From assembly GCF_000143415.4 (NCBI RefSeq), contig NW_003314309.1:1053199-1117198 (forward strand): a stretch of 64,000 nucleotides of DNA, written 5' to 3'. Position 1 is the stretch's first letter; each line of letters opens with the position of its first letter. Shown piece by piece: positions 22,676-64,000 of this stretch. This DNA is from Selaginella moellendorffii (lineage: Eukaryota; Plantae; Lycopodiophyta). A program made the translations under genes and the position numbers. Under the pieces are notes generated by a model, which saw only the letters and a program-made list of their open reading frames with translations, was not told where the DNA came from and ran no database searches.

Positions 22676-23734
22676 TTACGCTCCGGCTCTCGGTCTGGAT
22701 CCACACAGGCGCTTTCGGATCTGTTGCAAAATCTCGTTAGATAGATTTTCCATCGGAAAGGAGAAACTCTTTGCTTACTTCTGGGAGGTTTTGCTTGTGA
22801 ACGATTTCGAGGCGAGAGTCCAGAGTGTTGTCACACACGATCTTGCCGTCCTTGGTTGCGAGAACTATCCCTCCGGCGCTGCAAAGACATGGAAGTTATT
22901 CTTGATCCTTTGGAAGAAATGAAAGAGATGGATCTACCAGGAGAGGCCGTCGGCTTGGCGAGAGGGGAGGAACTTTCGATTGTCCACCATGACTTCCGAG
23001 AGCTGCAGCTTGGTCTTGGACGTGTACTCGTCTTTCGCGGAGTCGACGACAGACTCGACGAGATGACGGTCGGATTCTCGGCAGCGAATTTGCACGGCAG
23101 GCTCCTTCAATCTTATCAGGGCCTGAGTTGAAAGGAAAGAAACGAGAAAAGCTCTTTGCTACTGATCGACAAACTGGGAAGACTTACCTGGACGATGAGG
23201 TCTTTGAGAAGCTGCTTATAAGCTCCTTGGTTGTTTGATGTGTTTTGGAGCTGCTTCATGGCAGCGTCCTTCATCTCACGGACGAGATCGTCCTGCGCTT
23301 GCAGGATTTTCAAGCGCGACGCATTGAGCTGCGTGGAGTACTCGCTACAAAACAGCGAAAATCAAGCTTTTAAGCTGTCCGAAAGGAGGATAACGAGACA
23401 AAAAGCGAAGACAAAGAAGGATGGAACTCACATCTTTCGACGAACCTCGATTTGTTTCTCCTTGCGCTCGTATTCTTGGCGGACTTTCTTCTTCTCGGCC
23501 TCCACGATTTGCAGCTTCTCAATGTTAAACTCCTGGAAATCCAATGTCAGCTCCACCGAAGGAAAGAACCCATCCATCCATCTATCAATTTATTCCAAGT
23601 CTACAAAGAAGAGGAGGAGAAGAAAACCTTACCTCTTCTGCGGAGACCGAGATCTCGTTGGCTTTCTCCTCGGCTTCCTGGCGGATGAATCTCACCATCT
23701 GCGCGACCTGCTTGGCGACCTCGGCATCGTTCAT
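22676..23734 (-). CDS. VHA-E: Vacuolar H+-ATPase subunit E; 6 exons
   Basis: MNDAEVAKQVAQMVRFIRQEAEEKANEISVSAEE|EFNIEKLQ..|EYSTQLNASRLKILQAQDD..|ALIRLKEP..RCRE..|CAGGIVL..DGKIVCDNTLD.RL..|IRKRL; TAA at 22678-22676. Confidence 0.95.
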
Positions 23735-23934: not shown

Positions 23935-24989
23935 ATGGCGCGTCTTGGAGCTGTGTTCTTCGATCTGGACGACACGCTGGTGCTCACTCACGCCGCGACC
24001 AAGATCGCCAACGACGCTGTCAAGGCCGTGCTCGCGAATCGAGCGCCGTCGTCCAATGCCGACGAGGTGGTGAGCGCGTTTCTCGAGGGTTTCAGCTCCA
24101 GCCCCTGGGATCCAGTCGGTCAGGTAATTCTAGCTTGGCGATTTAGCTACATTGCTGTGGATTTTATTTGTGGATTCCCCAGGTCGATGTTACGGAGTGG
24201 CGAGCGCGAATCTGGCACGTTGCTCTCCAGAAATGGAGCGTCCAAGACATAGAACTAGCCAGAGTGAGTCCATTGCTCCAAGTTGTTAGTTTACTACCTC
24301 CATCCTTTCGCTTTTTTTCTAGGATTTGCAAGCTTGCTTCGACCGGGAGAGAATGCTTGCGTTCCAGTGGGCCGAAGGTGTCGAAGCGGTAAGGAGATTT
24401 CTAGTTTTTCTTCTCTTTCTCTCGTTATGACTTTCGAGCTTTAGAAGAGCAGCTTGTGCGGGAGTTGCAAAATCAAGGCTTGAAAGTCGGGCTCATCACG
24501 AATGGACACACTGTGGTAAGCTTGTTCTTTCCTGGGAATCTTCACATGATAAAAGTTCTTGCAAGGTCCAAAGAGCGAAGCTGGAAGCGTGCAAAGCTCA
24601 AGAACTCTTCAACGTTATTCTCGTGGGTGGAGGTGAGGCCCTTCGTTTTTCTCTAACTCGGTGATAACTTTCGTGCAGAGGAGCCCCGAGAAAAGCCATA
24701 CAAGGAGATTTTTCTCAAGGCTTGCGAGCTTGCCGGGTGTGATCCGCGAGAATCTGTCATGGTTGGAGACAATCTCTCGACAGACATTCAGGTGGTGTGA
24801 TAAACAGTACGCGTTTTGGTGCTAACTTTGATGCATCAGGGGGGTCTAAACGCTGGATTTCTCGCAACAATCTGGGTGAACTTACACGGCCATCCACCAT
24901 CAAGCTCGATCCATCCGAGCTATACAATCTCTAGCATTGCGGAGCTACCTTGCGTGCTCAAGGAAATCCAGAGGAAGTACACCAATTAA
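23935..24989 (+). CDS. HAD-superfamily phosphatase (NANP/HDHD4-like); 7 exons
   Basis: Motif I FFDLDDTL, motif II GLITNG, QRAKL, EKP..EIF..AC, motif IV VMVGDNLSTDIQ|GGLNAG. Confidence 0.88.
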
Positions 24990-25063: not shown

Positions 25064-28000
25064 TTAATCATCGACCAAAATTTGGAGTTTGACTGGGCGA
25101 TTGAGCAAGCTCTCGAACGCAGCCTCGAGAGCCGCGGCGTGCTCGTGCTGCTGGAACTTTCTAACGAACAGAGGAGACGATCCTATCGTCACGATTGCCG
25201 GCTGCGAGGTCTGTGAGATCGACACGAGTGATCCCTGCCAAAGAAGAACAAACCAACAAGTGAATCAATGAATCGTCTAAGTTCGCGGCAAGTACCTTTT
25301 GTGTCGCGAGAGCCAAGGTTGCTGGAGAGCTTTGAAGCACCGTGGACACTTGCTGCCATAGCTGCTCTAGATCTTCTCCTGGAGCTTGAGCGGGCTCCTT
25401 CGTCTTTGAATCTCTCGAGTTCTTCGTCTTGACTTTCGTAAAGCTCATGATCTTGTGCCAGAGATTTGTCCCTTGATCCGCATCCTCGTTTCCAGCTTCC
25501 TCACCACAGCTGCTGCTGCGCGCATTCTTCTCCAGAAGCTTGCCGGCCCTCCTGCGAATCCACTCCGGATAATCCCCGCTCTGGAAACCATCCGGCGGAG
25601 GAGCCAAGCCGGGAAACAATGCATGCGACGAAGAGAAGTGACACGCTGTAGCGTTCGCAAGCTCGGTGTGAAAGTTCTCGTAGTAGTCTTCCATGGCGAG
25701 TAGAGCTCTTGCGTTTACGTGGTTTGCCAGGTACTCCATCACTGCTCTCAACAAGGCTGCCTCGGTCTCTTGGAAGCCAGTTCTCAGCCGAAAGTCATCC
25801 AGAAGAACGAGCGAACTGCTTGTGACTTTGTCCAGGACCTTTCTTCCATCGGGCCAGTCGACGCTGTAGATTCCGTCCGCAATGGATAGTCGAGCTTCTT
25901 TAGCCGGTACAAAGCTGCCGATCTGTGCCAGCACCTGGATGAGAGCTACTTGTTGTAAGTAGCACGTCTTGCCACTGCCTCTGGGACCGGTGACGATGAG
26001 CAAGTCGGGCCTGTCTTCTACCTTCTTCGAACGACCGCGTCTCGGCTGGTAGCCCAGCGAGCACGAAGTCGGCTGGAAGTCTTTACGTATTTCAACCAGT
26101 GGATGTCTACCATCCACTATAGTGATTTGTCGTCCATCTGGTACTAGCTCTGGCTTGCTGAAATCCCTTGCTGCAGCGATTTCTGCATGAAACAAAACAA
26201 AGGTCGGCAATGGCGTCGTTTTGGAAAAGACATACCAGCGAAGTTGCAAAGGACGTCCAGTGCAGCCAATGCACTACTCGTTTCTTGTAGCGTCAGCAGC
26301 GAGTCTGTAACTTTCTTTCTCAGACTCTCCACAAGGTCCGAACGCTCAGAGATTGTATCGCTCGCTTCGAAACCAATGTCAGCATCAGTTGCGGAACTCC
26401 TTGCCACCTTCAGCAGAAAATACAAACGTAAGGTTCAAGCTCTTAGGCAGCCAAACGGTCAGTGTAGATCATTCAACATTCTATCAAAAGCCGGGACAAA
26501 CCTGAATCTCTTCGGCCAGTTTCTCGGCAAAAGCTTGATGGCGAATAACAGCCGAAAAATAATCATTTCCTGGAAATTCTTCAAGTATCTGAGAAATCCT
26601 GGGTAGCATCAACAGCGAGTCTGCCAAAGCAATAAGCTCGTCCCTGGAAAGCAGCTTGATCAGTACATTAGAAAGATGTTGCAGAGACCCACCAAGAAAG
26701 GGTGGACTGTCGTGCAATACTTCCCGAAAGGTTGGCAACATCCACCATGGTCGAGAGACAGGAACGCAATGCTTCACGAACAGGACTATTTTTTAGGAGA
26801 ACCTGAGGAGCTATTTAGTTGGATAAAAATCATAAGAGTCATTGCTACTGACCTCCACGGCATTTTGGCGTAAAAGAATCGATTCAAGACTTCTTAAAGG
26901 GTGTAACATCCATTGCCTCAGTAAACGAGTACCCATACTAGTTTTAGTTTCGTCCATTGCCCAAAGAAGGGACGCGGTCTCAGTTCTTTTACCTTCGACT
27001 AGCTGGAAATCACAATGATGAACAAGAACAGAATAGAGCTATTTAGTACCTCTAAGTAGCTTCTTACGCCTTCATCAAGACGAAGATAATCTTCGGTTTT
27101 ATACAAAAGTAATTGCCGAAGGGAAAGCTCGTCAAGTGCAAACGCTTGTATTTGCTGAACGTATCTGAGCACGAAAGTGTCACATACACTCCACTATAAA
27201 ACTCGCGATATAACTTAAGCATGCACCTTAGTAAGGCCCTGGCCGCAGAGTCAGTTAAAGACCACTGCTGAATTGCATCGACAGTTTTTTCTCCGATGTA
27301 TGGAAGTAAAAGCTGCACAATAGAAAAATGTCTCATCGTTTACAAAACTATAAAGACCTTACAGTATCATTTGAAATGGGAGAAAACTCTGACGAATCGC
27401 GTGCTACTACGCATACTTCTTCTAAATATGGTCTAATCGCCTGTGATGAGAAAAAACACAAAGATATATCATGAAGGCAAATTCAAGATCAACAAACTCA
27501 CTTGCGAGTTAAATATGGCCTCTCTTGGTTTTAGTCGACCCAGCTCGTCCATCAAAGCGGCCAAACCTTCAGATTGTGTAGCACAAAAATCTCCTGCAAT
27601 AAAGACGTAAGAAAGATACAAATATCATCATTTCAACCAACAGTACCGGTCGCTAAATCACAAAATGCTAGCCCCCAAGAAGAATCAGCGGACACGTTAA
27701 CTGCGACCAAATAATTATTATGTGTCTCGTCTATAATCCCTTCATCGAGAAGCATTCCTGGCGTCAAAACGCAGATAGATTCTTGGACCTCATCACCAAC
27801 CTATAACCATTTCCAAAACAGATATCAGCTTTGTATGCCTACAAAAAGCTTGCACGTACCTTTACAACGCTTATTCCTCTATCGAACAAAATTTTTGTAT
27901 ACACATAAAATTTACACGCTGGAAACCTCGTAACTGGAACTTCGATCTGCGTTTTACATCATCATCGTAAATCAGAGACGGTAAACGTAGCAAGCAACGT

Positions 28001-29777
28001 ACCTCGCCATCTTCGACTGTGCTTTGCCGAATCTTGCACGTTCTAGACAAAGAGATTGCATCTTCAAAAAGAGCCTGTAGCGTCATGTGCATAAAGAAAG
28101 CTCTCAGAGTGCGGAATGTAATACCTCGTAAAAGTCACCAGCTTTTAAGAGGTGAATAAAGCTTGGTCTCTTTCTTTTTGCCTCGACATAGTTCGCAAGA
28201 GCAGGGCTCAAAACTGTAGAATCCACAGATCCGGTATCCAGAAATGTCCTGCTCGACTGCTGCTCCATCTCAACCCTGACCCCTTCCACATCTTCTTCTA
28301 ATACCATCTCTTCCTCCACTTCATCAACCGTGATTTCCAGTTCCAAATCCTCCCAAGGAACGTTAAGCCTATCCTCCTTTGTCAGCTCCTGTGTAGCTGA
28401 TGAATCCGTCACTAACTCCCCTCTATCCATATCTCGGAAAAGCTTGGAGCTGGCGTATACTTCGTCAGCGGTGAAGGCCTTTTCTAAAAACTCACTGGCC
28501 GGAAGCTGAAGTTCGGATACTATTGCCTCCAGCACCGAAGCAAGCATATTCACATCTGCCATGGCGCGATGTGCACGCTCTGTGGAATGCAGACCATATG
28601 CTTCATGTAAAACAGAAAGTTTCAAAGACCGCCAGTTATATCCTGTAGTACGGTTATGAGACGCGAGAAATGGTATTTATAAACACGTACCGAATTTTTT
28701 CTTCGTTTCCCGAGCCAGAGGCATGGAATCTAAAAAGAGCCACCACTCAGGAACTTGTATCCCGCAACTCTGAAACTCTTTAAGAAGAAATGGAACGTCA
28801 AACCTCTTCCCGTTGTGCGCGACAAGGATAACAGGCTCATCACCCTTTCGACGGCTTTCTACAAACTGAATAATGGACGGGCCAACCTCTTTCCAGCTGC
28901 GAGGGAAAAAGAAAGAAAAGATAATGAAGTACGAACACAAAAGTAGTTTTCTTACCTGGGAACATGAGGCTTGTTCACCATCTGATTCGTTATTCCTGTA
29001 ACAGCTGTTATAAGGTAAGGAACAGTCCGGCCGGGATTCACTAGAGCAGAAATGGTACTGCGATCACCCCCAGCAAGATCACGAGCTGCAAACTCTATAA
29101 TGCGATCACCAGCAGCTCTAAAACCTGTTGTCTCGAGGTCGAAAACGATGATCGTCATCTTTGGAGCAGGAATTTCTGAAGTAATGCTGCTGTCACTTGT
29201 GCTGCTAGCCAAAATCTCTTCTTTGCTCCGTAGCAGTACCTCACTTTCCTGTGACGATGCCCCACTTTGCTCCAGGCCTGTTCGCTCCAAGACGCTCGAA
29301 GAAACCTTTAGCTCCATCCCATTGTCAGTTTGAAATCTTACGCTTTCTCCAAGATCTTTGGAGACTTTGGATGTGGAGGTTTCGATCTCGGAGCTCCCGA
29401 TCTCTTCCTCCTCACGTAAAGCTTGATCGGGACTCGAGGATGCCCACGTTGAAAATCTAGAGCGCAAGAACTGGAGCTTGATGTCTCGCAACGATGTCCT
29501 TGACAAGTAACGAGGATGAGGCTTGACGATAAAACACCTGAATGGCCCGATCGATCGACTGGAAATCACTGGAAACGGCAAAAATTTACCTGGAAGAACA
29601 GCACGAACACGAAGAAGGAACAATTCGCCCGACGAAGAGCCTTGCTCCTGCGAATTCGTGCTTGAGGAGTCCATAGCACGCAATGCCGGACTCCATATTC
29701 TCCACGATCTTCCTGACGATGCCGGGGCTCATATTCGCAGCTCACGGGCACTCACCGAGGAGAATCGCTGCCCGCAT
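25064..29777 (-). CDS. DPD1-type DEDDh 3'-5' exonuclease fused to a cyanobacterial-type MutS1 (clamp-less, degenerate ATPase); probably organelle-targeted; many short exons
   Basis: Exonuclease motifs FDLETTG, IIEFAA, VAHNGKRFD, AHRAMAD. The same exon runs on to MutS-I (YVEAKRK...GDFYE|ALFEDA). Later exons give LTPG, NNYLVAV..WGLAFCDLATG, SLLWAMD.T.T.MG.RLLRQWMLHPL, AALDVLC, GRHPLVE, TGPRGSGKTCYLQQ..AQIGSFVPA. Start at ATG 29777 (with a 43-nt intron) is tentative; alternative ATG at 29674. Confidence 0.85.
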
Positions 29778-30043: not shown

Positions 30044-33000
30044 ATGGGGTGAGTGAGCTCAGACTAGAATTCCTGCATTGCGCATCCACCGGGTGTGAGA
30101 TTTTCGGCAAGATCAGGCTAGATCCAGGCGATCTATGGCGGAAGAATTGGTCCTAGAATGTAGACTTCAGTGCTTAGTTTTGCGTTATTGGAGACTTACC
30201 TATAAGAATGTGTGATGTGATGTTCTTAGGAGTCAAGAGATGCTACTCCAGAGGTACCGGCGTGACAGGAGGGAACTTCTCTCGTTCATTCTATCGGCTA
30301 GCATTTTCCGCAAGGTGGTCATGCCTCCCGGAGCTGTCACTCTTGACGATATTGATCTAGAGCAAGTTAGCATTGATTATATCCTGGAATGCGCGAAGAA
30401 AGGTGAGGTTGAATGCTTTTGCTTTTCTAAAAGATAGCTTTTCTGATAGGTGGAATTCTCGAGCTTTCGGAGGCGATTAAAAAGTTTCACGATGATGCTC
30501 ACATTCCAGCGGTGGTATGTTCTGGTGACGTGCTGCTAATTCACACTAAAAGTTTTCTGGTTCTACAGGCAAATTCTTTAAAGGGTGACATCTATTATCT
30601 CGTTACAGATCCGCAAGTTTCAGGTCCACCTCCTATGCGCTCGGTCCCTGCGCCTGCGGCATTGAGTCCACCAGTCGCAAAATCATCGCTATCCAAGTCT
30701 ATATCTATACAGTCAACTCCATCGCAGCAAATCTCCGTTGATGACGAGATTGATGATTTTGAAGATGACAATGAGGTGACGGGGGAGCTGTCAAGAAGAA
30801 AGCTAAATGACGCGAGTGACCTCGTTTTGAAACTTCCTCCCTTTGCTACTGGTATGTCGTGTTACTTTTTAGATTTTACTACTAAAGCTCCATTTCTCAG
30901 GTTTATCCGAGGATGATTTGCGTGAGACTGCTTACGAAGTTCTTCTTGCATCAGTTGGTGCGACAGCGTATGTTTCACAGTTGATATGTTATCTAAGCGT
31001 TAATACTGGCTGGAACAGGGGTCTTGTTGCACCGCCCAAGGAAAAGAAAGAGGAAAAGAAAATGAAGCTCGTGAGGAAGTTTACCAGGAGTAAGTCCGAA
31101 AAGCACAAACCCGAGCCAACAAAGGCACAGGGGCTTGCTGGTTTACTGGAACTAATGCGTACACAGCTGGAGGTTTTTCTTTTGTTTTCATTTATTACAG
31201 CTACGGACATTTTATTTCTCTGTTTTCAGATTTCTGAGGCTTCCGACAAAAGGACAAGAGAAGCCTTGCTGCATTCTTCCGCTGGGAGGGTGGGCAAAAG
31301 AATGGACACTTTACTCATTCCACTTGAACTGCTTTGCGGTATTTCGAGAGCAGATTTCACGGAGAAGAAAGTTCATCTACGCTGGCAAAGAAGACAGGTA
31401 AATGTAAGTTAAACTTGTTTTTCAGCTGACATAGTTTGTTACAGCTAAATCTTCTAGAGGAAGGCCTTGTCAATTTTCCTGCTGTAAGTTTAGAGCACAA
31501 TGATCGCCAAGCTGGCGAGTTGAGAACATTAATAGCTAAGATAGAGGAAGCAGAGGTAAAAAAAAAAGGGCTCGTTTTTATGTCTGAAAACTGTTTCTTT
31601 GTTGCTTGTAGACATTACCATCCCCCGCGGGTCCAGCACAACATGCCGAGGCTTTGAAAGCGCTAAGAGGTGTTTCATTAGCGTTGGCAGAAAGAGCTAG
31701 CAGAGGGGATCAGATTGGGGAAGTTTGTCATTGGGCTGATGGCTATCATCTAAACGTTCGAATCTACGAAAGGTTGCTCAGCAGTACGTTTGATATTCTG
31801 GATGAAGGACAGCTAATCGAGGTAATTTCACAGGCTCTAGTTGAAATTATTACGATATGGTTTTGCAGGAGGCAGACGAGATCCTTGAGCTTCTCAAATC
31901 TACATGGAAGATATTAGGAATCACTCAAACTGTGCATAACACCTGTTATACATGGGTCCTTTTCCGCCAGGTAACCATTTTTTCCACATTGTACGTCAAC
32001 TTGGATACTACATGTGTGTATATTTAGTTTGTCATCACTGATGAAGTCTCGCTTTTACAACATGCTGCACAACAAATGAAAAGAATAGCATCTGATAGTC
32101 AACGCAGCGCACAAGAAAGAGCGTATATGAAGAGCTTGCGGTCTACCATTGTTTTGAATGGCACGTCCCAAGATCTTTCTTTTGTTCAATCTATAGTCGA
32201 GCCTATCAAGACTTGGGTAGAGAAGCGGCTTAACGATTACCACCTGCATTTTTCCGAGGTACTTACATGACATTTTCTTTGTTATAGCCATGACATTTTG
32301 ATGCAGGACGCAGCGAAAATGGAACAGTTTATTACGTTGGTTATGATCGCTGGAAGGTTAATAGCAGAAGAGGACGAAAAGACCGAAGTAAGCGTTTGAT
32401 AGAGATAAATTCGGAGGTTTGATTTTTCTTTGTTCAGATAACGAGAATGACGTCGGCAGCAAATCAAGCAGCTATTGCTAAACAGGCAGAGGAGTATATT
32501 TGGTCCTCAGTAAAACTCGCTTATGAGAGGGTATGTCATGATTTATTCCTCCAGGTGATACTACTTACAGTTTTTATAGGCTTTGGAAGGTGTGGATGCT
32601 AAATCTGAAGCAGAGCACGATCATCCTCTGGCTTTGCTCGCGGAAGATGTGGAAGCTCTTGCCAGGAAAGATGCTTCAACCTTTGCCCCCATTTTGTCTC
32701 GTTGGCAACCGCAAGCCAAAGCTATCACTGGCTCTCTCTTGCATACGCTGTACTACAAAGAACTGGTACCTGATTTGGTTTTCATTCATCTTTCATTTCT
32801 AAGTAACCTGTTTCTACCTAGAAACCATTTCTAGACGGTGTATCTCACTTGACAGATGACGTTGCGTCTGTTCTTCCTGCTGCTGATAGCCTGGATCGCT
32901 ACTTGACCGAACTTGTTGGAGCTGTTGATGATGGTAACAACGTTTATCGCCAGCAAATGACTTTTTATGAGGTGAGTAGACAACCCTTTCTAATTGCGAT

Positions 33001-55517: not shown

Positions 55518-57002
55518 TTTTTATGAGCTCAAGAGCAAGTTCACATAATAAAGTATAACAGGTAATCAAAATTTATACCCAAGGAATGAATGCAAAGTCA
55601 TTGCACTTAAATGTGTACCCACTCGGATCATCATTTTTATCTCTGCGTATGCAACGAAACTAGTTGCCCAATCTCATTGGATAGTATTCGCCAAAACTCA
55701 TTCTTTGATACTAAATGTAGTGCACATGGTTTTCATCTTTTATCCTATAGTGATTTACCATAAGATAACCACAAAGCGAAATCTAAACCTCCATGTGCCA
55801 TGTGTCATATGCCATATGCCATATGCCACATGTCTAAAGGACAGCGGAGTGGAACCCGAGTTTCATTGCCTTAGGCCACTAAACAAAAGAATAGTGCCAA
55901 ACTCCCAAGTATGGAACCAAGGAGCAATGGCACTGGAGCACGTAATAACTCCCGAGCATATAGCTCAAGGAGCAAAGGGACAAGAGCAGGAAGCAATTTG
56001 AATCAGTCTGTAACTGACTAAATTTTTCCATTTTACTTTAGTCACTTAACCGCATCTCCAACCACTTGAAGGAGTCTCACTCACAACCTCCATAAGTCCT
56101 ATTTCGGACTTGGGCTTGCTAGCCCCTAGAATGGCATCCCCGCCACTCAACCTTTGCACTTGGTCTAAGTGCCCCACGTGTCCAATCCCATGACCAACAC
56201 CCCAAGGTACCACTAACATATCAGCCCGTTATGCTAAGGCCATGCCCATTCACCTTGGTCACACTGGTGATCTAACACCACTTGCATCACAGTCCCGTCT
56301 CTCAAAGACTGGGCCATCCAGCCACGAGTGATCATCCCAGATCCACTCCTTAGCATCCTTAGGATGCCCACAGACATGGGGAATAGCCTTCCCCAACATC
56401 CCTTTATCAGTTCCTACCAAGTCCCTTTCCCGTCCATGGTTATGTTCACCAACACTGCCACTAGGTCGAGGCCCGCAGGCCCGGCCACTAAGTCCCATTG
56501 TCCCCTGGGACTTCCTCACCATGTAACTGTATCCGTAGTCACTACACTAGAAGATTGCTCCTCCTCCTTTCCCCCATTGGGACTTCGGGACAACATTTCG
56601 AAACACTGTGGCCCTACGTGAGCCCCATAGGTACTCTCCCCACCTTCCGCCTTTAGGTGCTCTAGCCATGGGCTTAGAGCGAGGTTCCATTGAGCCACAC
56701 TAGGTATCCAAGTAGGTAGTGCCACCCACACTTGGACTGGGAGCATCGGCCAGATGATCTCCCGGGGGAACTAGAGCCGGCTCTTGAACACTTCACCAAG
56801 CTACCCCGCTTGTCGGTCCATGTTCACTTTAGTCTTGGACTTCCCAGTGGTCAACTCATCACCCAACACTGGGTGCAGCCTCTCTGGGCCAAACTGGCCT
56901 TTCCTGGCCAAACTGGCTCCATTGCAGTCCTCCCCCTACTATACTTTTGGAGCTCACCAAACCCCCCAGAGTCTAGGAGACGAACGCTTTAGGCTTTCAC
57001 CC

Positions 57003-57110
57003 TCTCAGACTCGAATTCGGACTTGGACTCGGACTCAGACTCGGACTCGGACTCGGCCTCGGCCTCGGTCTCGGCCTCGGCCTCGGTCTCGGCCTTGGTC
57101 TCGGTCCCGA

Positions 57111-57157
<47 letters not shown>

Positions 57158-57500
57158 ACCTCGGACTCCATCTCGGGTCCATCTCGGACTCCATCTCGGA
57201 TTCCATCTCGGACTCTATCTCGGACTCCATCTCGGACTCCATCTCGGACTCCGTCTCGGTCCATCTCGGACTCCATCTCGGACTCCGTCTCGGTCTATCT
57301 CAGACTTTGTCTCGGTCTATCTCAGACTTTGTCTCGGACTCCATCTCGGACTCCGTCTCAGTCCATCTCGGACTCCATCTCGGAGTCCGTCTCGGTCCAC
57401 TTCGGACTCCATCTCGGGCTCCACTTCGGACTCCATCTCGGGTCCATCTCGAGCTCCACTTCGGGTCCATCTCGGACTCCACTTCGGGTCCATCTCGGAC
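57003..57500. repeat. Hexamer/12-mer minisatellite (TCGGAC, TCGGTC, GGACTCCATCTC) in the left LTR
   Basis: Direct tandem array; source of many spurious low-complexity ORFs. Confidence 0.95.
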
Positions 57501-60500
57501 ACTTCCACATGTCATGTGTTGGTTCTTTTGGGTCCCTTTTTGGAGCCTTGCTTATTGCTCGCTTCATGCTCGTTCCTTGAGCACTCTGTTGGGAGTTCCA
57601 CTCCCGCTCTCAACCTCTCAAGTCGGAGCCTTTTAGTCCAAACGTGTTACGCTCGTTTGACTTTTGCTTCGGCCACTACCACATGGCACCCTTTCGGCTC
57701 CACTTTGGGGCTTAGGGATTTGTGTCTCACAACTCCACCACCCATAGACGAAGTTCGATGTCCTCATCGAACGGTAAACCCTTTTATAAAGTAACACCCA
57801 CATGTATTACCGTTTCCATCCTTGGACCCCGGCCAATATTTGTCTATTGGTTTGACACCAAAGGCGCACCATGCCTTGTCCATCCTTCAAGGAGCATAGT
57901 CTCTCCAATATAGAGACTCATTCGACCACCTGGGGTGGTTTACTCTCTTTTATTGGTTCAGTTCTTGTTAAACCCGTTAGGGACTCCCTCTCTAACTCAA
58001 TTCCACTACTTATTCTCGAGTAGTCTCAAATTCCATCGACATAACTTTGCACTTTGGAACTTTTAGTTTTGACTTCTCAGAGTCAATTTCCTAGGTGTCT
58101 CCGACACCTTACGTTGCACATGGTGCAACTCCACTTCCCTATCCTAGGAAGTTCTTTACTTGAGGATACCATCATCCTCTCTCTGATATCGTGCCACCTT
58201 TGACACTAAGTTTCAGTTATCATAATTGGTGCTAGGGCTACCCACGGCCCTATTATTTGGCTACCTTCCCACTCCCCCCTTTGGAGCATCCACTCTGCCA
58301 AATCGGAGCAGTTGGGAATCCACCCTTAGGGAAACTTTGCCTTTCCCACAATCTGTTAGCACCCAACACATTAGTGTTCTCGGCCTAACTTTGCCATTTG
58401 GATTCTTTCCCAGGATTCTTATGGCTCTTTTCTTAGCCACTAGTCTTTTGCTCCTATCCTTGATTGTTGCACCTAGCAACACAGGATTGCTACCTCCATT
58501 TTCGAGGTTTCCTTTCAGTTCCATAGCAAACACTTTACTTTGCCAAGTCCAGAGGGTGTTCACCCCTAGTACGTCTCTTTAACATTTTCTGCTGTGGGCT
58601 CTATCCATGGCCCAACTTTTGAGATCCTCCCTTGGATCTCTTATAAAGACTACCTTCCTCGGACTTACTATGCCATAGCATTAACATAGTTCATTTCCCT
58701 TAGATGTTCTTCTCGCTTGGTCACCTTAACCAAACCACACCATTATCAATAGTTCAAATCAACACTTTGAACTTAAAATCATATTCCTTAACCCAAACAA
58801 AGACTTTGTCTTTGTTTAACCACAAGATCACCTAGTGATCTCATCCTGACCCCTTAATAGGTCTACCCATAGGAACTAGGTCTTCCAGACCCTTCTATGT
58901 TGTTGACTATGACCCCGGGGGCATCCCCCACACTTGGCGGTGTGCCCAAGCCAGCCCTTCCGGCCAAGAATCCATAGCAACTGAGACTGAGTGTCCCTAT
59001 CTCATTCACCACGTCCTTGGTGCCCTTTGCACCAAAGTGTTCAAGTTAGATATGCCAAGCTTTCACTCTAAGCAATCTAACTGTGCATCATGACTCCGAG
59101 GCATCCCTCACTTGGCGGTGTGCCCAAACTAGTCTCCTCACTGAGAGTCCATGACCACCGAAAAATGAGTGTCCTCATATTCCAAACCATCACCATGCCC
59201 TAGTGATTTGGGACTTGAACCCAAGCACTAGAGGGTCGGGACTTGAACCCAACCTCTGTATATGCATCTACGGACGGCATCACACCGGATGCCTGGCGTG
59301 GCTCCCTACGCCGGTGCTCCAACTTATTTTTAAAGCGCGCTACAGATCACAGCTTAGGAACCTAGTTCCTCCACACTGCTAAGTCCTCTCGTTTGACAAG
59401 TCTATGATCATGCATGGACTCCTCCATGCTCGGCCCCATGGCCCACCCTTTTTTGAAGTTATCACCTTCAACTAGGGCATTTGTTCCCCCGACTTGCCAA
59501 TCTCGCTTAGCAAATCCTCCGACAACTGTAACATGGTTCCTGCATAAGCGTGAAAGTCCTTGGCCATTGACTTTCGTTCAAAACCCTTTCTTTGAACACT
59601 CAAGAACTACTTCCCTAACCTTGATAGCTTTGCCTCATGGCAAGCTTCAAGACCACGCTTCTGCTGCACCATTCTGATTTCGCGCATTTCATGAACCATT
59701 TACCCTTGGCCTTTCTAGGTACTAAGCTACTTAGAATCGTTTTTGAGAACCTTGAAGGAACTCTGTCCCTTAGCTTGCTAAGGCCTCCCTTTTTGCAAGC
59801 TTTATAGTTGCCATATAGTCTAACATGGACAATTCTATATTTTAGACTCTCTATGGCATCACGGTTGCTAGCAACAACATCCTCGAGCACCCTCTTGATT
59901 CTCCACTCCCAACTTGCATAACCACCATTGGATATGCCCTTTGATTTCTATGGTTCAGTTCTATCCCAATACTACTTGCCTTTTGGCCCCATATGTTTCC
60001 TTTGGTTATTCTCCTCCAGACTAGGAGGATAGCTTTGCACATTTTACTATGCCTTAGCAAGTATTTTTAGGGATGAACCTACCCGATAGCCTAGGGAGTG
60101 GTTCCTCAATCTTGGGCATGCTCACCTTATAATCCCACACATTGGGATTAACATTGCTGCTTATGGGCCCTTACATGCCCATCACTAGCCTTGCCAAAAT
60201 TCCATTTTTGGCTTTGTTCAATTCGGATAGACAGTCTTCTCCTGTTTCCACAATCTTGGACATTTGGATAGCACCTACTATCCATCATTCGCTAGGGACT
60301 TAGTCCTTTGGGCCTTATCTATTGCCCTTGCGACACGAAATACCACCTCCTAGTGTTCTAGAGTGCTTGGGTGTCCCAATGATGGCCTCCTGATAATGAG
60401 CATTCCCGTTTACGACATTGACTTACTATATCGCAACATAAGCAATTTATCCCCCATAAGGGTATATCTAACTTCTTTATGCCATTAAGAAGTCTTGGGT

Positions 60501-60540
60501 AGCTACCTTCTACCCATTTAACCAATTGTCTTGCACCTCT

Positions 60541-60626
60541 TGCTTAGTTGCCCCATAGTTGTCAAGTCCTACAACTCATTGCTTGCTTAGTTGCCCCATA
60601 GTTGTCAAGTCCTACAACTCATTGCT
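60541..60626. repeat. Perfect 43-bp tandem duplication inside the LTR element
   Basis: TGCTTAGTTGCCCCATAGTTGTCAAGTCCTACAACTCATTGCT x2. Confidence 0.9.
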
Positions 60627-62828
60627 TGGTGCTACCACACCTCCATCATTATCTGGGTCACCACACTCCAACCGCATGCCTTCCAGCTTAGGCCATGCCG
60701 TTCCCGCTTCCGTTGGGATTCCCTTGGCAAGGGGTTCTTATGAACCCACCATCATAACCTCCAGGTATCACACCTTGGCACATTTGGTGTCTCCACACCA
60801 TCGGCCCCACAAGCCTACCCTTATGACACTATTTATTAGTGTCTAGGTCTTTGCCAAGACCAATATAGTTGTTCCTCATGCTAACTATCTGTTAGCACCG
60901 CACCATAGTGTTTGCACCCAACTCTGGGCCAAAGTTGCTTTCTTCTGGGAACATCTTTCCCACAACTTTAGTATGGCACCTTCTGCCATCAATGAGATAC
61001 CTACTGTTCTCATACTTGGATCTTATGATCCTCCCCATACCTCATGGGGCACCATACACTTCGGTCCAAATGCTCTAACCAATTCCTTAGGACCATTCCC
61101 TGACTCCGCTTGAGTCATCCAGCATTTTGGACTTTGCTAATCCAACAACTTGCGAGGTCTCAGTCTTAGAGGTGCCAACTTACTGGAATACAACTTCTTG
61201 TATTCATGTCCTACTCACAAGGACAACTTTTGCAAGTGTTACTTTGACACTTGATGATTTTCTTGGGGCTAACCTTTGCCCCTTAGGACTATTTATCCAT
61301 GTGATGAGGATAGCAGCTCATCTTTAAGTACACCCCCAATCCCTTGGGTTGTTCCAGCATTTATTAGAGGTAACCCCGGCTACCATTTCAAGGACTGGTG
61401 TCCTCTTCTATATTTGACCTCCCACAGTCAACAATTCCAGTCTCAAATTTATGAGTACCAGCCTCAACCATATAAGGGTAATCTTGTGACTCCTTTATTG
61501 TTTTGGAGTCTGCATCTTTCCCGTGATCCCAACTATAGTTGTTTACCACAACTACATTAGCTCGTTTATTGCGTCAAACGCTCATCTGGATCACATCCTC
61601 AACACTCTGAGGAACCCTTATACTGTTCCCAAGATCCCAAAGTCGTTCCCTTACTGCCCCTCTTCCATCCACCACATCGTGCACAAGTTCACGCATGAAC
61701 TTGAGTGGAGAGCCATGTCCTCTCGACATGCTACTCCTCGAGGATAGGTCCATATCTAGGACCTTCCAACTCCAATACAAGTGGTGATATGCTTTAGCAC
61801 CAATAAAAGTCGGACTAAGGAACAGCTCTGATACCAAGTTGTAACCGACTAAATTTTTCCATTTTATTTTAGTCACTTAACCGCATCTCCGACCACTTGA
61901 AGGAGTCTCACTCACAACCTCCATAAGTCCTATTTCGGACTTGGGCTTGCTAGCCCCTAGAATGGCATCCCCGCCACTCAACCTTTGCACTTGGTCTAAG
62001 TGCCCCACGTGTCCGATCCCATGACTAACACCCCAAGGTACCACTAACATATCAGCCCGTTACGCTAAGGCCATGCCCATTCACCTTGGTCACACTAGTG
62101 ATCTAACACCACTTGCATCACAATCTTGTCTCTCAAAGACTGGGCCATCCATTCACGAGTGATCATCCCAGATCCACTCCTTAGCATCCTTAGGATGCCC
62201 ACAGACATGGGGAATAGCCTTCCCCAACATCCCTTTATTAGTTCCTACCAAGTCCCTTTCCCGTCCATGGTTATGTTCACCAACACTGCCACTAGATTGA
62301 GGCCCGCAGGCCCGGCCACTAAGTCCCATTGTGGGACTTCCTCACCATGTAACTGTATCCGTAGTCACTACACTAGAAGACTGCTCCTCCTCCTTTCCCC
62401 CATTGGGACTTCGGGACAACATTTCGGAACACCGTGGCTCTACGTGAGCCCCATAGGTACTCTCCCCACCTTCCGCCTTTAGGTGCTCTAGCCATGGGCT
62501 TAGAGCGAGGTCCATTGAGCCACACCAGGTATCCAAGTAGGTAGTGCCACCCACACTTGGACTGGGAGCATCGGCCAGATGATCTCCCGGGGGAACTAGA
62601 GCCGGCTCTTGAACACTTCACCAAGCTACCCCGCTTGTCGGTCCGTGTTCACTCTAGTCTTGGACTTCCCAGTGGTCAACTCATCACCCAACACTGGGTG
62701 TAGCCTCTCTGGGCCAAACAGGCCTTTCCTGGCCAAATTGGCTCCACTGCAGTCCTCCCCCTACTATACTTTTGGAGCTCACCAAACCCCCCAGGGTCTG
62801 GGAGACGAATGCTTTGGGCTTTCACCCT

Positions 62829-63262
62829 CTCAGACTTGAACTCGGACTTGGACTCGGACTTGGACTCGGACTCGGACTCGGACTCGGACTCGGACTCGGA
62901 CTCGGACTCGGACTCGGCCTCGGTCTCGGTCCTGATCTCGGTCTCAGTCTCGGTCTCGGTCTCGGTCTCGACCTCGGACTCCATCTCGGGTCCATCTCGG
63001 ACTCCATCTCGGATTCCATCTCGGACTCCATCTCGGACTCCATCTCGGACTCCGTCTCGGACTCCGTCTCGGACTCCATCTCGGACTCCGTCTCGGACTC
63101 CATCTCGGACTCCGTCTCGGACTCCATCTCGGACTCCGTCTCGGACTCCATCTCGGACTCCGTCTTGGTCCATCTCGGACTCCATCTCGGACTCCGTCTC
63201 GGTCCATCTCGAGCTCCACTTCGGGTCCATCTCGGACTCCACTTCGGGTCCATCTTGGACAC
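62829..63262. repeat. Hexamer/12-mer minisatellite in the right LTR
   Basis: Same units as 57003-57500 but with different copy numbers. Confidence 0.95.
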
Positions 63263-64000
63263 TTCCACTTGTCATGTGTTGGTCCTTTTGGGTCCCTTTT
63301 TGGAGCCTCGCTTATTGCTCGCTTCATGCTCGTTCCTTGAGCACTCCGTTGGGAGTTCCACTCCCGCTCTCAACCTCTCAAGTCGGAGCCTTTTAGTCCA
63401 AACGTGTTATGCTCGTTTGGCTTTTGCTTTGGCCACTACCATGTGGCACCCTTTCGGCTCCACTTTGGGGCTTAGGGATTTGTGTCTCACATAGTCCTAG
63501 AGCAACCAGCATCCCAGTGCCAAGACCAACACGCAAAATGGAGCCAAACAGAGTTTGGCACTATTTCAGCATACTAATGATCTAATGCAAGGATACGGGT
63601 ACTCCACCAGCTGATATGAAATGGAACTTGGGCTTTGACCCAAGCCAAATACAAAACAAGGACAAGCACGCAAGCAAGAACTAAACTATGCCTCAAATTA
63701 GTCAACCATACCTGATCTACCCACTATCCCCCTCCCCTTGAGGAACACATGTTTTGGGCTTTCACCCCAAGCCACCTTTAATACTAGGAGTTAGTCTCTA
63801 GGACAAGCTTGAAACTTACTAAATATGGAATGTTCTTAAATTGCAAATTTGGACATGGGACGAACACTATTGTATTCAGGATAATTTTTACATTCCATAA
63901 ATATACTAAATGAGCAAATCTAGACACTTTCCATAATTAACATGTGGGACCGAAATGAAACTAACACAAAGAGCATGATAGTGAGGGTGTTTGGCAAACA

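What the first reader, a model, noticed from the sequence alone, without database searches (positions are those of the whole stretch)
25064..29777. DPD1-type exonuclease fused to a cyanobacterial-type MutS1: candidate one-protein organellar mismatch-excision system
Seen: all DEDDh motifs (FDLETTG ~29123-29143, HNGKRFD, HRAMAD ~28556-28573) in a DPD1-like context (ARDLAGG..ST...LVNPG; WLFLDSMPLARE). One uninterrupted exon (~28125-28640) carries Exo III, an acidic linker and the start of MutS domain I with GDFYE (28139-28125), so the fusion is not a gene-model artefact. The MutS part has features I recognise as cyanobacterial (WGLA.. after NN.L.AV, SLLWA.D, PDL.I.TGP..SGK.CYL.Q), unlike MSH2-7 or plant MSH1. 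Known: angiosperm DPD1 is a stand-alone organelle DNA exonuclease, and cyanobacterial-like MutS1 has been reported in seedless plants but is functionally uncharacterised. Inference: the protein couples mismatch sensing directly to 3'-5' excision in plastids or mitochondria, and seed-plant DPD1 may be its freed N-terminal module. I cannot verify whether this architecture is already published.
Basis: partly seen in the sequence, partly recalled or inferred. Interest (0 to 1): 0.92.

Follow-up and report, generated by a model that had tools for sequence, protein, structure and literature searches.

The report
Published DPD1–MutS1 fusion gene, Selaginella copy
This is the spikemoss (Selaginella moellendorffii) copy of a plant gene that joins an organelle DNA-trimming exonuclease to a cyanobacterial-type mismatch sensor; the fusion and the proposed repair role were published in 2024, but this copy has lost parts of the sensor that normal mismatch repair needs.

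Summary
Window 29732-25064 (minus strand) holds one 17-exon gene, S. moellendorffii SELMODRAFT_420926 / LOC9647424 (1254 aa). Exon 4 (28642-28125) runs without a stop from Exo III through an acidic linker to GDFYE.

The exonuclease is DPD1-like, 46-53% identical to seed-plant DPD1. The MutS part groups with a Nodularia-type cyanobacterial clade, not with MSH2-7.

The architecture is already published, as is the idea that the fused DPD1 supplies excision (Sloan et al. 2024, Plant Cell, PMC12292046; preprint July 2024).

This copy differs from that paper's general description in three ways:
- About 95 residues, the whole clamp domain IV, are missing. There is no Pfam MutS_IV hit, and nothing in the 64 kb encodes it.
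- A 16-residue block holding the GQSTF signature is missing. Walker B reads DD instead of DE, and THYHEL has become MEDYYEN.
- The MutS module's end branch is about 3 times those of Riccia and Diphasiastrum, while the exonuclease's is about 1.25 times Riccia's.

FXE, Walker A and a conserved C-terminal DnaX/DnaA_N-like domain (PF23007) remain.

A canonical ATP-driven mismatch-excision machine is therefore unlikely here. A DNA-targeted exonuclease on a degenerate MutS scaffold is more likely. The scan had already noted the clamp/ATPase loss and the C-terminal domain on this same DNA.

The parts
25064..29732 (-). Whole gene: S. moellendorffii SELMODRAFT_420926 / LOC9647424, 17 exons, 1254 codons plus stop (scaffold GL377613.1)
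   Evidence: An exact spliced mapping of P0152 reproduces the protein; all introns are GT-AG, 47-94 bp.
29207..29732 (-). N-terminal ~175 aa (exon 1 29732-29590, intron, start of exon 2): Ser/Arg-rich presequence-like region, possible transit peptide. The start codon and first intron are uncertain.
   Evidence: The first 100 aa hold 16 Ser, 10 Arg and 2 Asp. An alternative unspliced start (MDSS...) is visible in the ORF list. RefSeq isoform X2 of the other haplotype starts at the M just before FDLETTG. No targeting predictor was available.
28530..29206 (-). DPD1-type DEDDh 3'-5' exonuclease domain (aa ~176-348; exons 2-4) with D181, E183, D275, H335, D340
   Evidence: Pfam RNase_T 178-347, 80 bits. 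PDB hits are the PolC exonuclease and TREX1/2, with catalytic residues aligned. It is 46-53% identical to seed-plant DPD1.
28125..28642 (-). Bridging exon 4 (aa 311-483): Exo III motif, acidic linker, start of MutS domain I ending exactly at GDFYE
   Evidence: One open frame with no stop, AG acceptor at 28644-28643 and GT donor at 28124-28123.
26236..28215 (-). MutS domains I-III (aa ~453-902; exons 4-15). FXE is kept, a ~10-aa gap lies in the CEQ region of domain I, and clamp domain IV is absent.
   Evidence: Pfam MutS_I 457-538, MutS_II 565-684 and MutS_III 708-902 cover the whole profile in 195 aa, with no MutS_IV hit. Alignments.
26408..26501 (-). Intron 14 (94 bp, the longest): the junction where ~95 residues (clamp domain IV plus adjoining lever) are missing
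   Evidence: Homologues have 121-125 aa where this protein has 27. Taq MutS 372-504 faces query residues 385-433. tblastn of 8 homologues' clamp segments finds nothing in the 64 kb. In the AF2 model two lever helices are joined by a short turn.
25296..26182 (-). Exon 16 (aa 903-1198): degenerate MutS domain V and a low-complexity tail. Walker A GPRGSGKT is kept; the 16-aa GQSTF signature block is deleted (between 25865 and 25850 region); Walker B is LVLLDD (25811-25794); MEDYYEN replaces THYHEL (25694-25674).
   Evidence: Pfam MutS_V gives only 69 bits, profile 1-46, against 214-225 bits in Diphasiastrum and Riccia. Alignments. The exon is continuous, so the deletion cannot be a splicing artefact.
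25064..25234 (-). Exon 17, which with the end of exon 16 (from ~25340) forms the C-terminal DnaX(tau)/DnaA_N-like alpha-beta domain (aa ~1171-1250)
   Evidence: PF23007 31-37 bits (cut-off 27), matched by all 8 land-plant MutS1 C-termini. NCBIfam DnaX NF011510, E 2e-7. AF2 pLDDT 84. Foldseek hit to DnaA domain I 4tps, TM 0.62/0.68. 25 invariant columns across 8 species.

Best explanation
The locus is the Selaginella moellendorffii orthologue of the published Viridiplantae DPD1-MutS1 fusion. It is one 17-exon nuclear gene. Its product has four parts: a Ser/Arg-rich N-terminal presequence, an intact DPD1-type DEDDh 3'-5' exonuclease, a cyanobacterial-derived MutS1 body, and a C-terminal DnaX/DnaA_N-like domain. 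That much is shown. Also shown: in this species the MutS body keeps the mismatch-stacking FXE motif and Walker A. It has lost clamp domain IV, the trans-acting signature block, the Walker B glutamate and the conserved histidine, and it evolves about three times faster than in Riccia and Diphasiastrum. The exonuclease and the C-terminal domain stay conserved. Inferred: the protein acts in plastids and/or mitochondria as a DNA-targeted 3'-5' exonuclease. The degenerate MutS body would serve as a DNA-binding or dimerising scaffold, possibly still preferring distorted or heteroduplex DNA through domain I. The C-terminal domain would serve as a protein-docking module. It would not work as an ATP-switched sliding clamp that licenses excision, as in canonical mismatch repair.
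For: Identity: P0152 maps exactly onto the window. Fusion: exon 4 is one open frame from HRAMAD to GDFYE. The same architecture occurs in Riccia, Adiantum and Ceratopteris, and as uninterrupted 1761-aa and 2027-aa ORFs on transcript-like Logan contigs. Already described in PMC12292046. Exonuclease intact: RNase_T 80 bits, all five DEDDh residues aligned with PolC-exo/TREX and with 27 relatives. MutS origin: the plant clade plus the Nodularia-like group get 100% SH-aLRT; Taq MutS 180 bits against MSH3 102, MSH2 73 and MSH6 43. Degeneration: no MutS_IV hit; MutS_V 69 against 214-225 bits; gaps of 68+26 and 16 residues; DE to DD; THYHEL lost; the clamp is not encoded anywhere in the window; below the NCBIfam MutS equivalog cut-offs (349 < 480; 314 < 642). 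The fold is otherwise retained: AF2 pLDDT 82, pTM 0.84, TM 0.74-0.78 to E. coli MutS. Rates: MutS end branch 2.17 against 0.69-0.80, exonuclease end branch 0.49 against 0.39. The C-terminal domain is conserved, 39-52% identical across land plants.
Against: No transcript, localisation or biochemical data for Selaginella were available here, and targeting was not predicted. The retained FXE and Walker A could still support some nucleotide-dependent mismatch binding. Asp can sometimes substitute poorly for the Walker B Glu. The haplotype comparison gives dN/dS 0.57 from only 29 changes, not significantly below 1. The other haplotype carries a 1-bp deletion at codon 1101. Partial decay of the gene therefore cannot be excluded. 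No second Selaginella species was found in the databases to test whether the deletions are old and maintained.
Confidence: 0.75

Rival explanations
1. One reading: a fully functional one-protein mismatch-excision system. MutS1 senses a mismatch, switches with ATP, and hands a 3' end to its own DPD1 exonuclease.
For: FXE and Walker A are retained, all DEDDh residues are intact, and the two modules are covalently linked. The same hypothesis is raised for the family in PMC12292046. It is plausible for Riccia and Diphasiastrum, where domain V scores 214-225 bits and domain IV is present.
Against: In this gene clamp domain IV is deleted, the signature block is deleted, Walker B is DD, and the conserved His is lost. 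From established knowledge of E. coli and Taq MutS, these elements are needed for DNA encirclement, ATP hydrolysis and the sliding-clamp switch. The protein scores below the NCBIfam MutS equivalog cut-offs.
Confidence: 0.13
2. A gene in decay: the MutS part, or the whole gene, is drifting towards the loss already completed in seed plants and has no selected function beyond, at most, the exonuclease.
For: The MutS branch is three times longer. There are multiple deletions of essential motifs. dN/dS between haplotypes is 0.57 and not significantly below 1. The second haplotype has a frameshift upstream of the C-terminal domain. A partial duplicate fragment lies elsewhere in the genome (P0002).
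Against: A 1254-codon frame across 17 exons is intact, with every splice site canonical. The predicted MutS fold is confident. FXE, Walker A and the far C-terminal domain are conserved (52% identity to Diphasiastrum) even though they lie downstream of the degenerate region. A dead 3' half would not keep these features.
Confidence: 0.1
3. A gene-model artefact: two adjacent genes (DPD1 and MutS1) wrongly merged.
For: The public models are automatic. The N-terminus and one internal 'intron' differ between models.
Against: Exo III and FXE share one uninterrupted exon. No stop lies between the modules. Identical architecture appears in liverwort, ferns and intron-less transcript-like contigs.
Confidence: 0.02

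Closest known systems
Viridiplantae DPD1-MutS1 fusion proteins (Sloan et al. 2024, Plant Cell koae277; 'chloroplastic MSH1' of Hofstatter & Lahr 2021)
   Same: An N-terminal DPD1-orthologous DEDDh exonuclease with all five catalytic residues, a cyanobacterial-like MutS1 with FXE, a long N-terminal extension, and presence in a seedless land plant.
   Different: That paper states that plant MutS1 keep the full set of domains and the Walker A, Walker B and signature elements. This copy lacks domain IV, the signature block, the Walker B Glu and the THYHEL His. Selaginella is not named in the paper's text. The C-terminal DnaX/DnaA_N-like domain is not mentioned there.
Angiosperm DPD1 (AT5G26940-type stand-alone organellar exonuclease)
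   Same: 46-53% identity over the whole exonuclease domain, with the same DEDDh motifs and flanking signatures.
   Different: DPD1 is ~315-335 aa with no MutS part. Seed-plant DPD1 forms its own clade (95/91) and lacks a 2-residue insert that the fusion proteins share.
Bacterial/cyanobacterial MutS1 (E. coli, Taq, Nodularia)
   Same: Domains I, II, III and the N-terminal half of V. FXE. A cyanobacterial-style Walker A context (SGK-CYL-Q). Overall fold TM 0.74-0.78.
   Different: No clamp domain, a degenerate ATPase and HTH region, an added exonuclease and C-terminal domain, and scores below the NCBIfam equivalog cut-offs.
Plant MSH7 (reduced clamp domain) and plant MSH1 (MutS fused to a GIY-YIG nuclease)
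   Same: Precedents, cited in PMC12292046, for a plant MutS with a reduced clamp (MSH7) and for a MutS fused to a nuclease acting in organelles (MSH1).
   Different: MSH7 is a nuclear eukaryotic MSH6 paralogue. MSH1 carries a C-terminal endonuclease of different fold and has a different origin. No GIY-YIG domain is present here.
DnaX (tau) C-terminal region / STICHEL DnaA_N-like domain (PF23007) and DnaA domain I
   Same: The last ~80 aa pass the PF23007 cut-off, match a DnaX NCBIfam model, and fold like DnaA domain I.
   Different: The domain is attached to a MutS rather than a clamp-loader ATPase. Its binding partner is unknown.

Membership tests
DPD1-MutS1 fusion (Sloan et al. 2024) | DPD1-orthologous DEDDh exonuclease with all five active-site residues | tested here: met
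   D181, E183, D275, H335 and D340 are aligned with 27 relatives and with PolC-exo/TREX. The top stand-alone hits are named DPD1.
DPD1-MutS1 fusion (Sloan et al. 2024) | Exonuclease and MutS1 on one polypeptide | tested here: met
   Exon 4 (28642-28125) is one open frame from Exo III to FXE. No Selaginella cDNA was available.
DPD1-MutS1 fusion (Sloan et al. 2024) | MutS part of cyanobacterial (plastid EGT) affinity | tested here: met
   The plant clade plus the Nodularia-like group get 100% SH-aLRT against 23 other bacterial MutS. The best named bacterial hit is Nodularia. Only one named cyanobacterium was in the set.
DPD1-MutS1 fusion (Sloan et al. 2024) | Organellar transit peptide | not testable with these tools
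   Only composition was examined: an S/R-rich N-terminus with few acidic residues. No TargetP was available. The start codon is uncertain.
Canonical MutS1 (TIGR01070 / NF003810 equivalogs) | Whole-protein score above the curated cut-off | tested here: not met
   314 bits against a cut-off of 641.7, and 349 bits against 480. Only profile positions 2-405 align well.
Canonical MutS1 | Phe-X-Glu mismatch-binding motif in domain I | tested here: met
   GDFYE at aa 479-483.
Canonical MutS1 | Clamp domain IV (PF05190) | tested here: not met
   There is no Pfam hit, whereas Riccia, Diphasiastrum, Adiantum and P0005 all have one. About 95 aa are absent. The clamp is not encoded anywhere in the window.
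Canonical MutS1 | Walker A P-loop | tested here: met
   GPRGSGKT.
Canonical MutS1 | Walker B Asp-Glu, GQSTF signature block, and THYHEL histidine | tested here: not met
   The sequence reads LVLLDD-FRLRT, has a 16-aa deletion, and has MEDYYEN in place of THYHEL. MutS_V aligns only over profile 1-46.
Eukaryotic MSH2-7 | Closer to MSH2/3/6 than to bacterial MutS | tested here: not met
   Taq 180, Neisseria 159 and E. coli 137 bits, against MSH3 102, MSH2 73 and MSH6 43. The N-terminal domains align only to bacterial MutS.
Plant MSH1 | C-terminal GIY-YIG endonuclease | tested here: not met
   No GIY-YIG family appears in the Pfam scan. The C-terminus is PF23007 instead.
PF23007 DnaA_N-like_STI | Score above the gathering cut-off and the alpha-beta fold | tested here: met
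   31.3 bits in the whole protein and 37.4 bits for the isolated domain, against a cut-off of 27. Foldseek hit to DnaA domain I, TM 0.62/0.68, rmsd 2.6.

The most novel reading that the evidence does not exclude
The Selaginella protein is a naturally clamp-less, hydrolysis-impaired MutS that still uses domain I (FXE) to hold the fused DPD1 exonuclease on mismatched or heteroduplex organellar DNA. It would represent a stage in a stepwise decay of the MutS module across vascular plants: bryophytes and Diphasiastrum keep the motifs; ferns have lost the Walker B Glu, the His and in some cases FXE; Selaginella has also lost the clamp and signature; seed plants keep only DPD1. That series would mean the exonuclease, not mismatch repair, is the selected core of the fusion.
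Probability: 0.3. Interest if true: 0.55.

Novelty: already known. Interest (0 to 1): 0.3.

Why it matters
The headline has been in the literature since 2024: a DPD1 exonuclease fused to a plastid-derived MutS1, possibly supplying excision in organellar mismatch repair. It therefore adds no new kind of system.

What this locus adds is a caution and a lead.
- Caution: the published generalisation that plant MutS1 proteins keep all domains and ATPase elements does not hold for S. moellendorffii. By the alignments here, it does not fully hold for ferns either.
- Lead: a MutS that keeps FXE but lacks the clamp and catalytic ATPase residues is a natural separation-of-function variant. It could show what the MutS body contributes to the exonuclease, and how seed plants came to keep DPD1 alone.
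- Further lead: the conserved C-terminal DnaX/DnaA_N-like domain is absent from the published description. It points to an unknown binding partner.

Tried and rejected
1. Searching single exons with Pfam gave only fragments. The full picture needed the public full-length protein P0152.
2. I looked for other Selaginella or lycophyte orthologues, to date the deletions and measure selection. Two database searches found only the two S. moellendorffii haplotypes, a partial duplicate (P0002) and Diphasiastrum.
3. The haplotype dN/dS rests on 10 synonymous and 19 non-synonymous changes (omega 0.57). That is too few to separate constraint from drift.
4. A sequence search of the C-terminal domain against PDB gave only chance-level RRM hits. 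The fold search was needed, and tau in 5fku matched only weakly.
5. I checked for a hidden clamp exon. All introns are 94 bp or shorter, and tblastn of eight homologues' clamp segments found only chance hits (E >= 0.1) anywhere in the 64 kb. Rejected.
6. The two-genes artefact is rejected because of exon 4.
7. The exonuclease tree was meant to settle whether seed-plant DPD1 is a freed module. It was inconclusive (AU p 0.15 and 0.12).
8. No supplementary files of the paper were held, so I could not check whether Selaginella was in its Fig. 4 sampling.
Full report
**1. What is in the sequence**

The minus strand between 29732 and 25064 carries one gene. A representative-library search with the large C-terminal exon returned a 98%-identical 1208-aa protein. 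Its cluster holds four S. moellendorffii entries.

One of them, P0152 (EFJ17637.1 = XP_002981449.1, SELMODRAFT_420926 / LOC9647424, 1254 aa), is encoded on scaffold GL377613.1. It maps exactly onto the window as 17 exons with GT-AG introns of 47-94 bp. My hand-read splice junctions for exons 2-8 agree with this model.

Exon 4 (28642-28125) is one open frame from the Exo III motif (H335, D340), through a 104-aa linker with 29 acidic residues, to GDFYE, which ends exactly at the donor site.

**2. What the parts are**

Pfam on the whole protein gives the following:
- RNase_T, aa 178-347, 80 bits
- MutS_I, MutS_II and MutS_III
- a truncated MutS_V
- PF23007, 'STICHEL, DnaA_N-like alpha-beta domain', at aa 1171-1250

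The exonuclease aligns with PolC-exonuclease and TREX1/2 structures, with all DEDDh residues in place. Its best stand-alone relatives are seed-plant proteins named 'exonuclease DPD1, chloroplastic/mitochondrial', at 46-53% identity over 94-98% of the domain.

The MutS part scores 180 bits against Taq MutS, 159 against Neisseria and 137 against E. coli. It scores only 102, 73 and 43 bits against human MSH3, MSH2 and MSH6, and those hits cover domain V only. In a tree of 35 MutS sequences, the five plant proteins form a clade. Together with the Nodularia-like group they are separated from 23 other bacterial MutS with 100% SH-aLRT support. No GIY-YIG domain is present.

**3. Is the fusion real and general?**

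Besides the shared exon, the same architecture is annotated in Riccia (1864 aa), Adiantum (1556 aa) and Ceratopteris (1592 aa). Two Logan contigs of 6.6 and 6.7 kb carry uninterrupted 1761-aa and 2027-aa fusion ORFs. For an intron-rich land-plant gene, that indicates assembled transcripts.

I had no Selaginella transcript data.

**4. It is already published**

- It describes the cyanobacterial-like MutS1 of liverworts, mosses, lycophytes and ferns, and its loss in seed plants.
- It reports conservation of the five TREX-like catalytic residues in all sampled DPD1-MutS1 proteins.
- It describes DPD1-RecG fusions in some green algae.
- It proposes that the fused DPD1 provides the chew-back step of mismatch repair, or acts on invading strands.
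- It credits Hofstatter and Lahr 2021 with the first report of the gene.

No later functional paper was found.

**5. Where this copy departs from the published description**

The paper says plant MutS1 keep all domains and the Walker A, Walker B and signature elements. Selaginella is not mentioned in its text. In this protein:

(a) Clamp domain IV is gone.
- There is no MutS_IV hit. MutS_III covers its whole profile in 195 aa, against about 290 aa with a nested domain IV in Riccia, Diphasiastrum, Adiantum and P0005.
- Alignments show gaps of 68 and 26 columns. Homologues have 121-125 aa where this protein has 27.
- HMMER pairs query residues 385-433 with Taq residues 372-504.
- The gap coincides with intron 14, which is only 94 bp. 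tblastn of eight homologues' clamp segments finds nothing in the 64 kb.
- The AlphaFold model (pLDDT 82, pTM 0.84) joins the two lever helices by a short turn. It still superposes on E. coli MutS at TM 0.74-0.78.

(b) The ATPase is degenerate.
- Inside the continuous exon 16, a 16-residue block holding the GQSTF signature is missing.
- Walker B reads LVLLDD-FRLRT instead of LLDE-GRGT.
- THYHEL is replaced by MEDYYEN.
- The SYG/HTH region is unrecognisable.
- MutS_V scores 69 bits over profile positions 1-46, against 214-225 bits in Diphasiastrum and Riccia.
- The protein falls below both NCBIfam MutS equivalog cut-offs.

(c) About 10 residues of the CEQ region of domain I are absent.

FXE and Walker A (GPRGSGKT) are retained.

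The fern sequences also lack the Walker B Glu and the His, so ATPase decay is not confined to Selaginella.

**6. Differential constraint**

The Selaginella end branch in the MutS tree is 2.17 substitutions per site, against 0.69 for Riccia and 0.80 for Diphasiastrum. In the exonuclease tree it is 0.49, against 0.39 for Riccia.

The last ~80 aa are 39-52% identical across eight land-plant MutS1 proteins, with 25 invariant columns. So the exonuclease and the C-terminal domain are conserved, while the MutS body has diverged.

The two assembled haplotypes differ by 10 synonymous and 19 non-synonymous changes (omega 0.57, too few to be decisive). Haplotype B (GL377578.1) has a 1-bp deletion at codon 1101, equivalent to window position 25587. 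That deletion explains two things: the odd 'intron' in JGI model P0001, and the frame-shifted C-termini of RefSeq isoforms X1 and X2.

**7. The C-terminal domain**

All eight land-plant MutS1 C-termini match PF23007. The Selaginella one reaches 37 bits against a cut-off of 27.

It also matches the DnaX model NF011510, with E 2e-7. Its AlphaFold model (pLDDT 84) resembles DnaA domain I (4tps) at TM 0.62/0.68 and rmsd 2.6.

Cyanobacterial MutS lacks this domain. The 2024 paper does not mention it.

**8. How it most likely works**

Shown: an intact DEDDh exonuclease is tethered to a MutS-fold body that keeps the mismatch-contacting motif and a P-loop but lacks the clamp and the catalytic ATPase residues.

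Background from established work on E. coli and Taq MutS: the clamp closes around DNA. The Walker B Glu, the signature Ser contributed in trans, and the His are needed for hydrolysis and for the ATP-driven switch to a sliding clamp.

Inferred: the Selaginella protein cannot run the canonical cycle. More likely it is an organellar 3'-5' exonuclease whose MutS body provides dimerisation and DNA targeting, perhaps a static preference for distorted or heteroduplex DNA. Its C-terminal domain would dock a partner.

Rival explanations are full mismatch-excision function (0.13), a decaying gene (0.10) and a gene-model artefact (0.02).

**9. The 'freed module' idea**

The exonuclease tree joins seed-plant DPD1, the fusion proteins and two Spirogloea proteins in one clade (95/88). 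Within it, seed-plant DPD1 forms one group (95/91) and fusion plus alga forms another (96/91).

A fission in the seed-plant line predicts that seed-plant DPD1 sits next to the fern fusions. That tree is 11 log-likelihood units worse but is not rejected (AU p 0.15). The question stays open.

**10. Earlier scan notes**

Two first-stage notes on this same window state the clamp and ATPase loss (s1-392289) and the DnaX/DnaA_N-like last exon (s1-392361). I had reached both results independently before reading the notes, and I tested them as described above.

**Verdict**

The feature is real and was read accurately. As a fusion architecture with a proposed excision role, it is already known. The Selaginella-specific degeneration and the C-terminal domain are modest additions. 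Interest 0.3.

Noticed in passing
L002 (scaffold GL377578.1), position equivalent to window 25587: The second assembled haplotype of the gene has a 1-bp deletion (GGTTTCC to GGTTCC) at codon 1101. This shifts the frame upstream of the conserved C-terminal domain. It explains the artificial intron in JGI model P0001 and the aberrant C-termini of RefSeq isoforms X1 and X2. It could be a real null-like allele or an assembly error.
   Followed up: partly
another S. moellendorffii scaffold (protein P0002, SELMODRAFT_417901, 209 aa): A partial duplicate, 97% identical to aa ~1066-1198 of this gene (MEDYYEN... to ...ATQK), is fused to an unrelated acidic tail. It is probably a gene fragment or pseudogene.
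   Followed up: no
alignments of P0009, P0164, P0005, P0158 (ferns and fern-like Logan transcripts): Fern DPD1-MutS1 proteins also lack the Walker B glutamate (LLDG/LLDD) and the THYHEL histidine, and have altered signature blocks. This is contrary to the general statement in the 2024 review. Riccia, P0171 and Diphasiastrum keep the Walker B Glu and the GQS signature; Diphasiastrum reads TYYHNL for THYHEL.
   Followed up: partly
window 25064-25340 and the C-termini of P0156, P0007, P0005, P0158, P0171, P0009, P0164: A C-terminal DnaX(tau)/DnaA_N-like domain (PF23007) is conserved in all eight land-plant MutS1 proteins examined. It is absent from cyanobacterial MutS and is not described in the published account.
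   Followed up: yes
window 30044-32732 (+), 23935-24989 (+), 22676-23734 (-), below 22490 (-): The neighbouring genes are an UNC13/PATROL1-like protein, a HAD-family hydrolase, V-ATPase subunit E and aspartate-semialdehyde dehydrogenase. The same order occurs on both haplotype scaffolds.
   Followed up: no
window 56001-64000: There is strong, sustained negative GC skew (-0.20 to -0.28) and negative AT skew, unlike the rest of the window. The cause was not examined.
   Followed up: no
window 29590-29732 versus 29537-29683: The 5' end of the gene is uncertain. The public model splices a 143-bp first exon to exon 2, while an unspliced reading gives an alternative in-frame start (MDSS...). This affects any transit-peptide prediction.
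   Followed up: no
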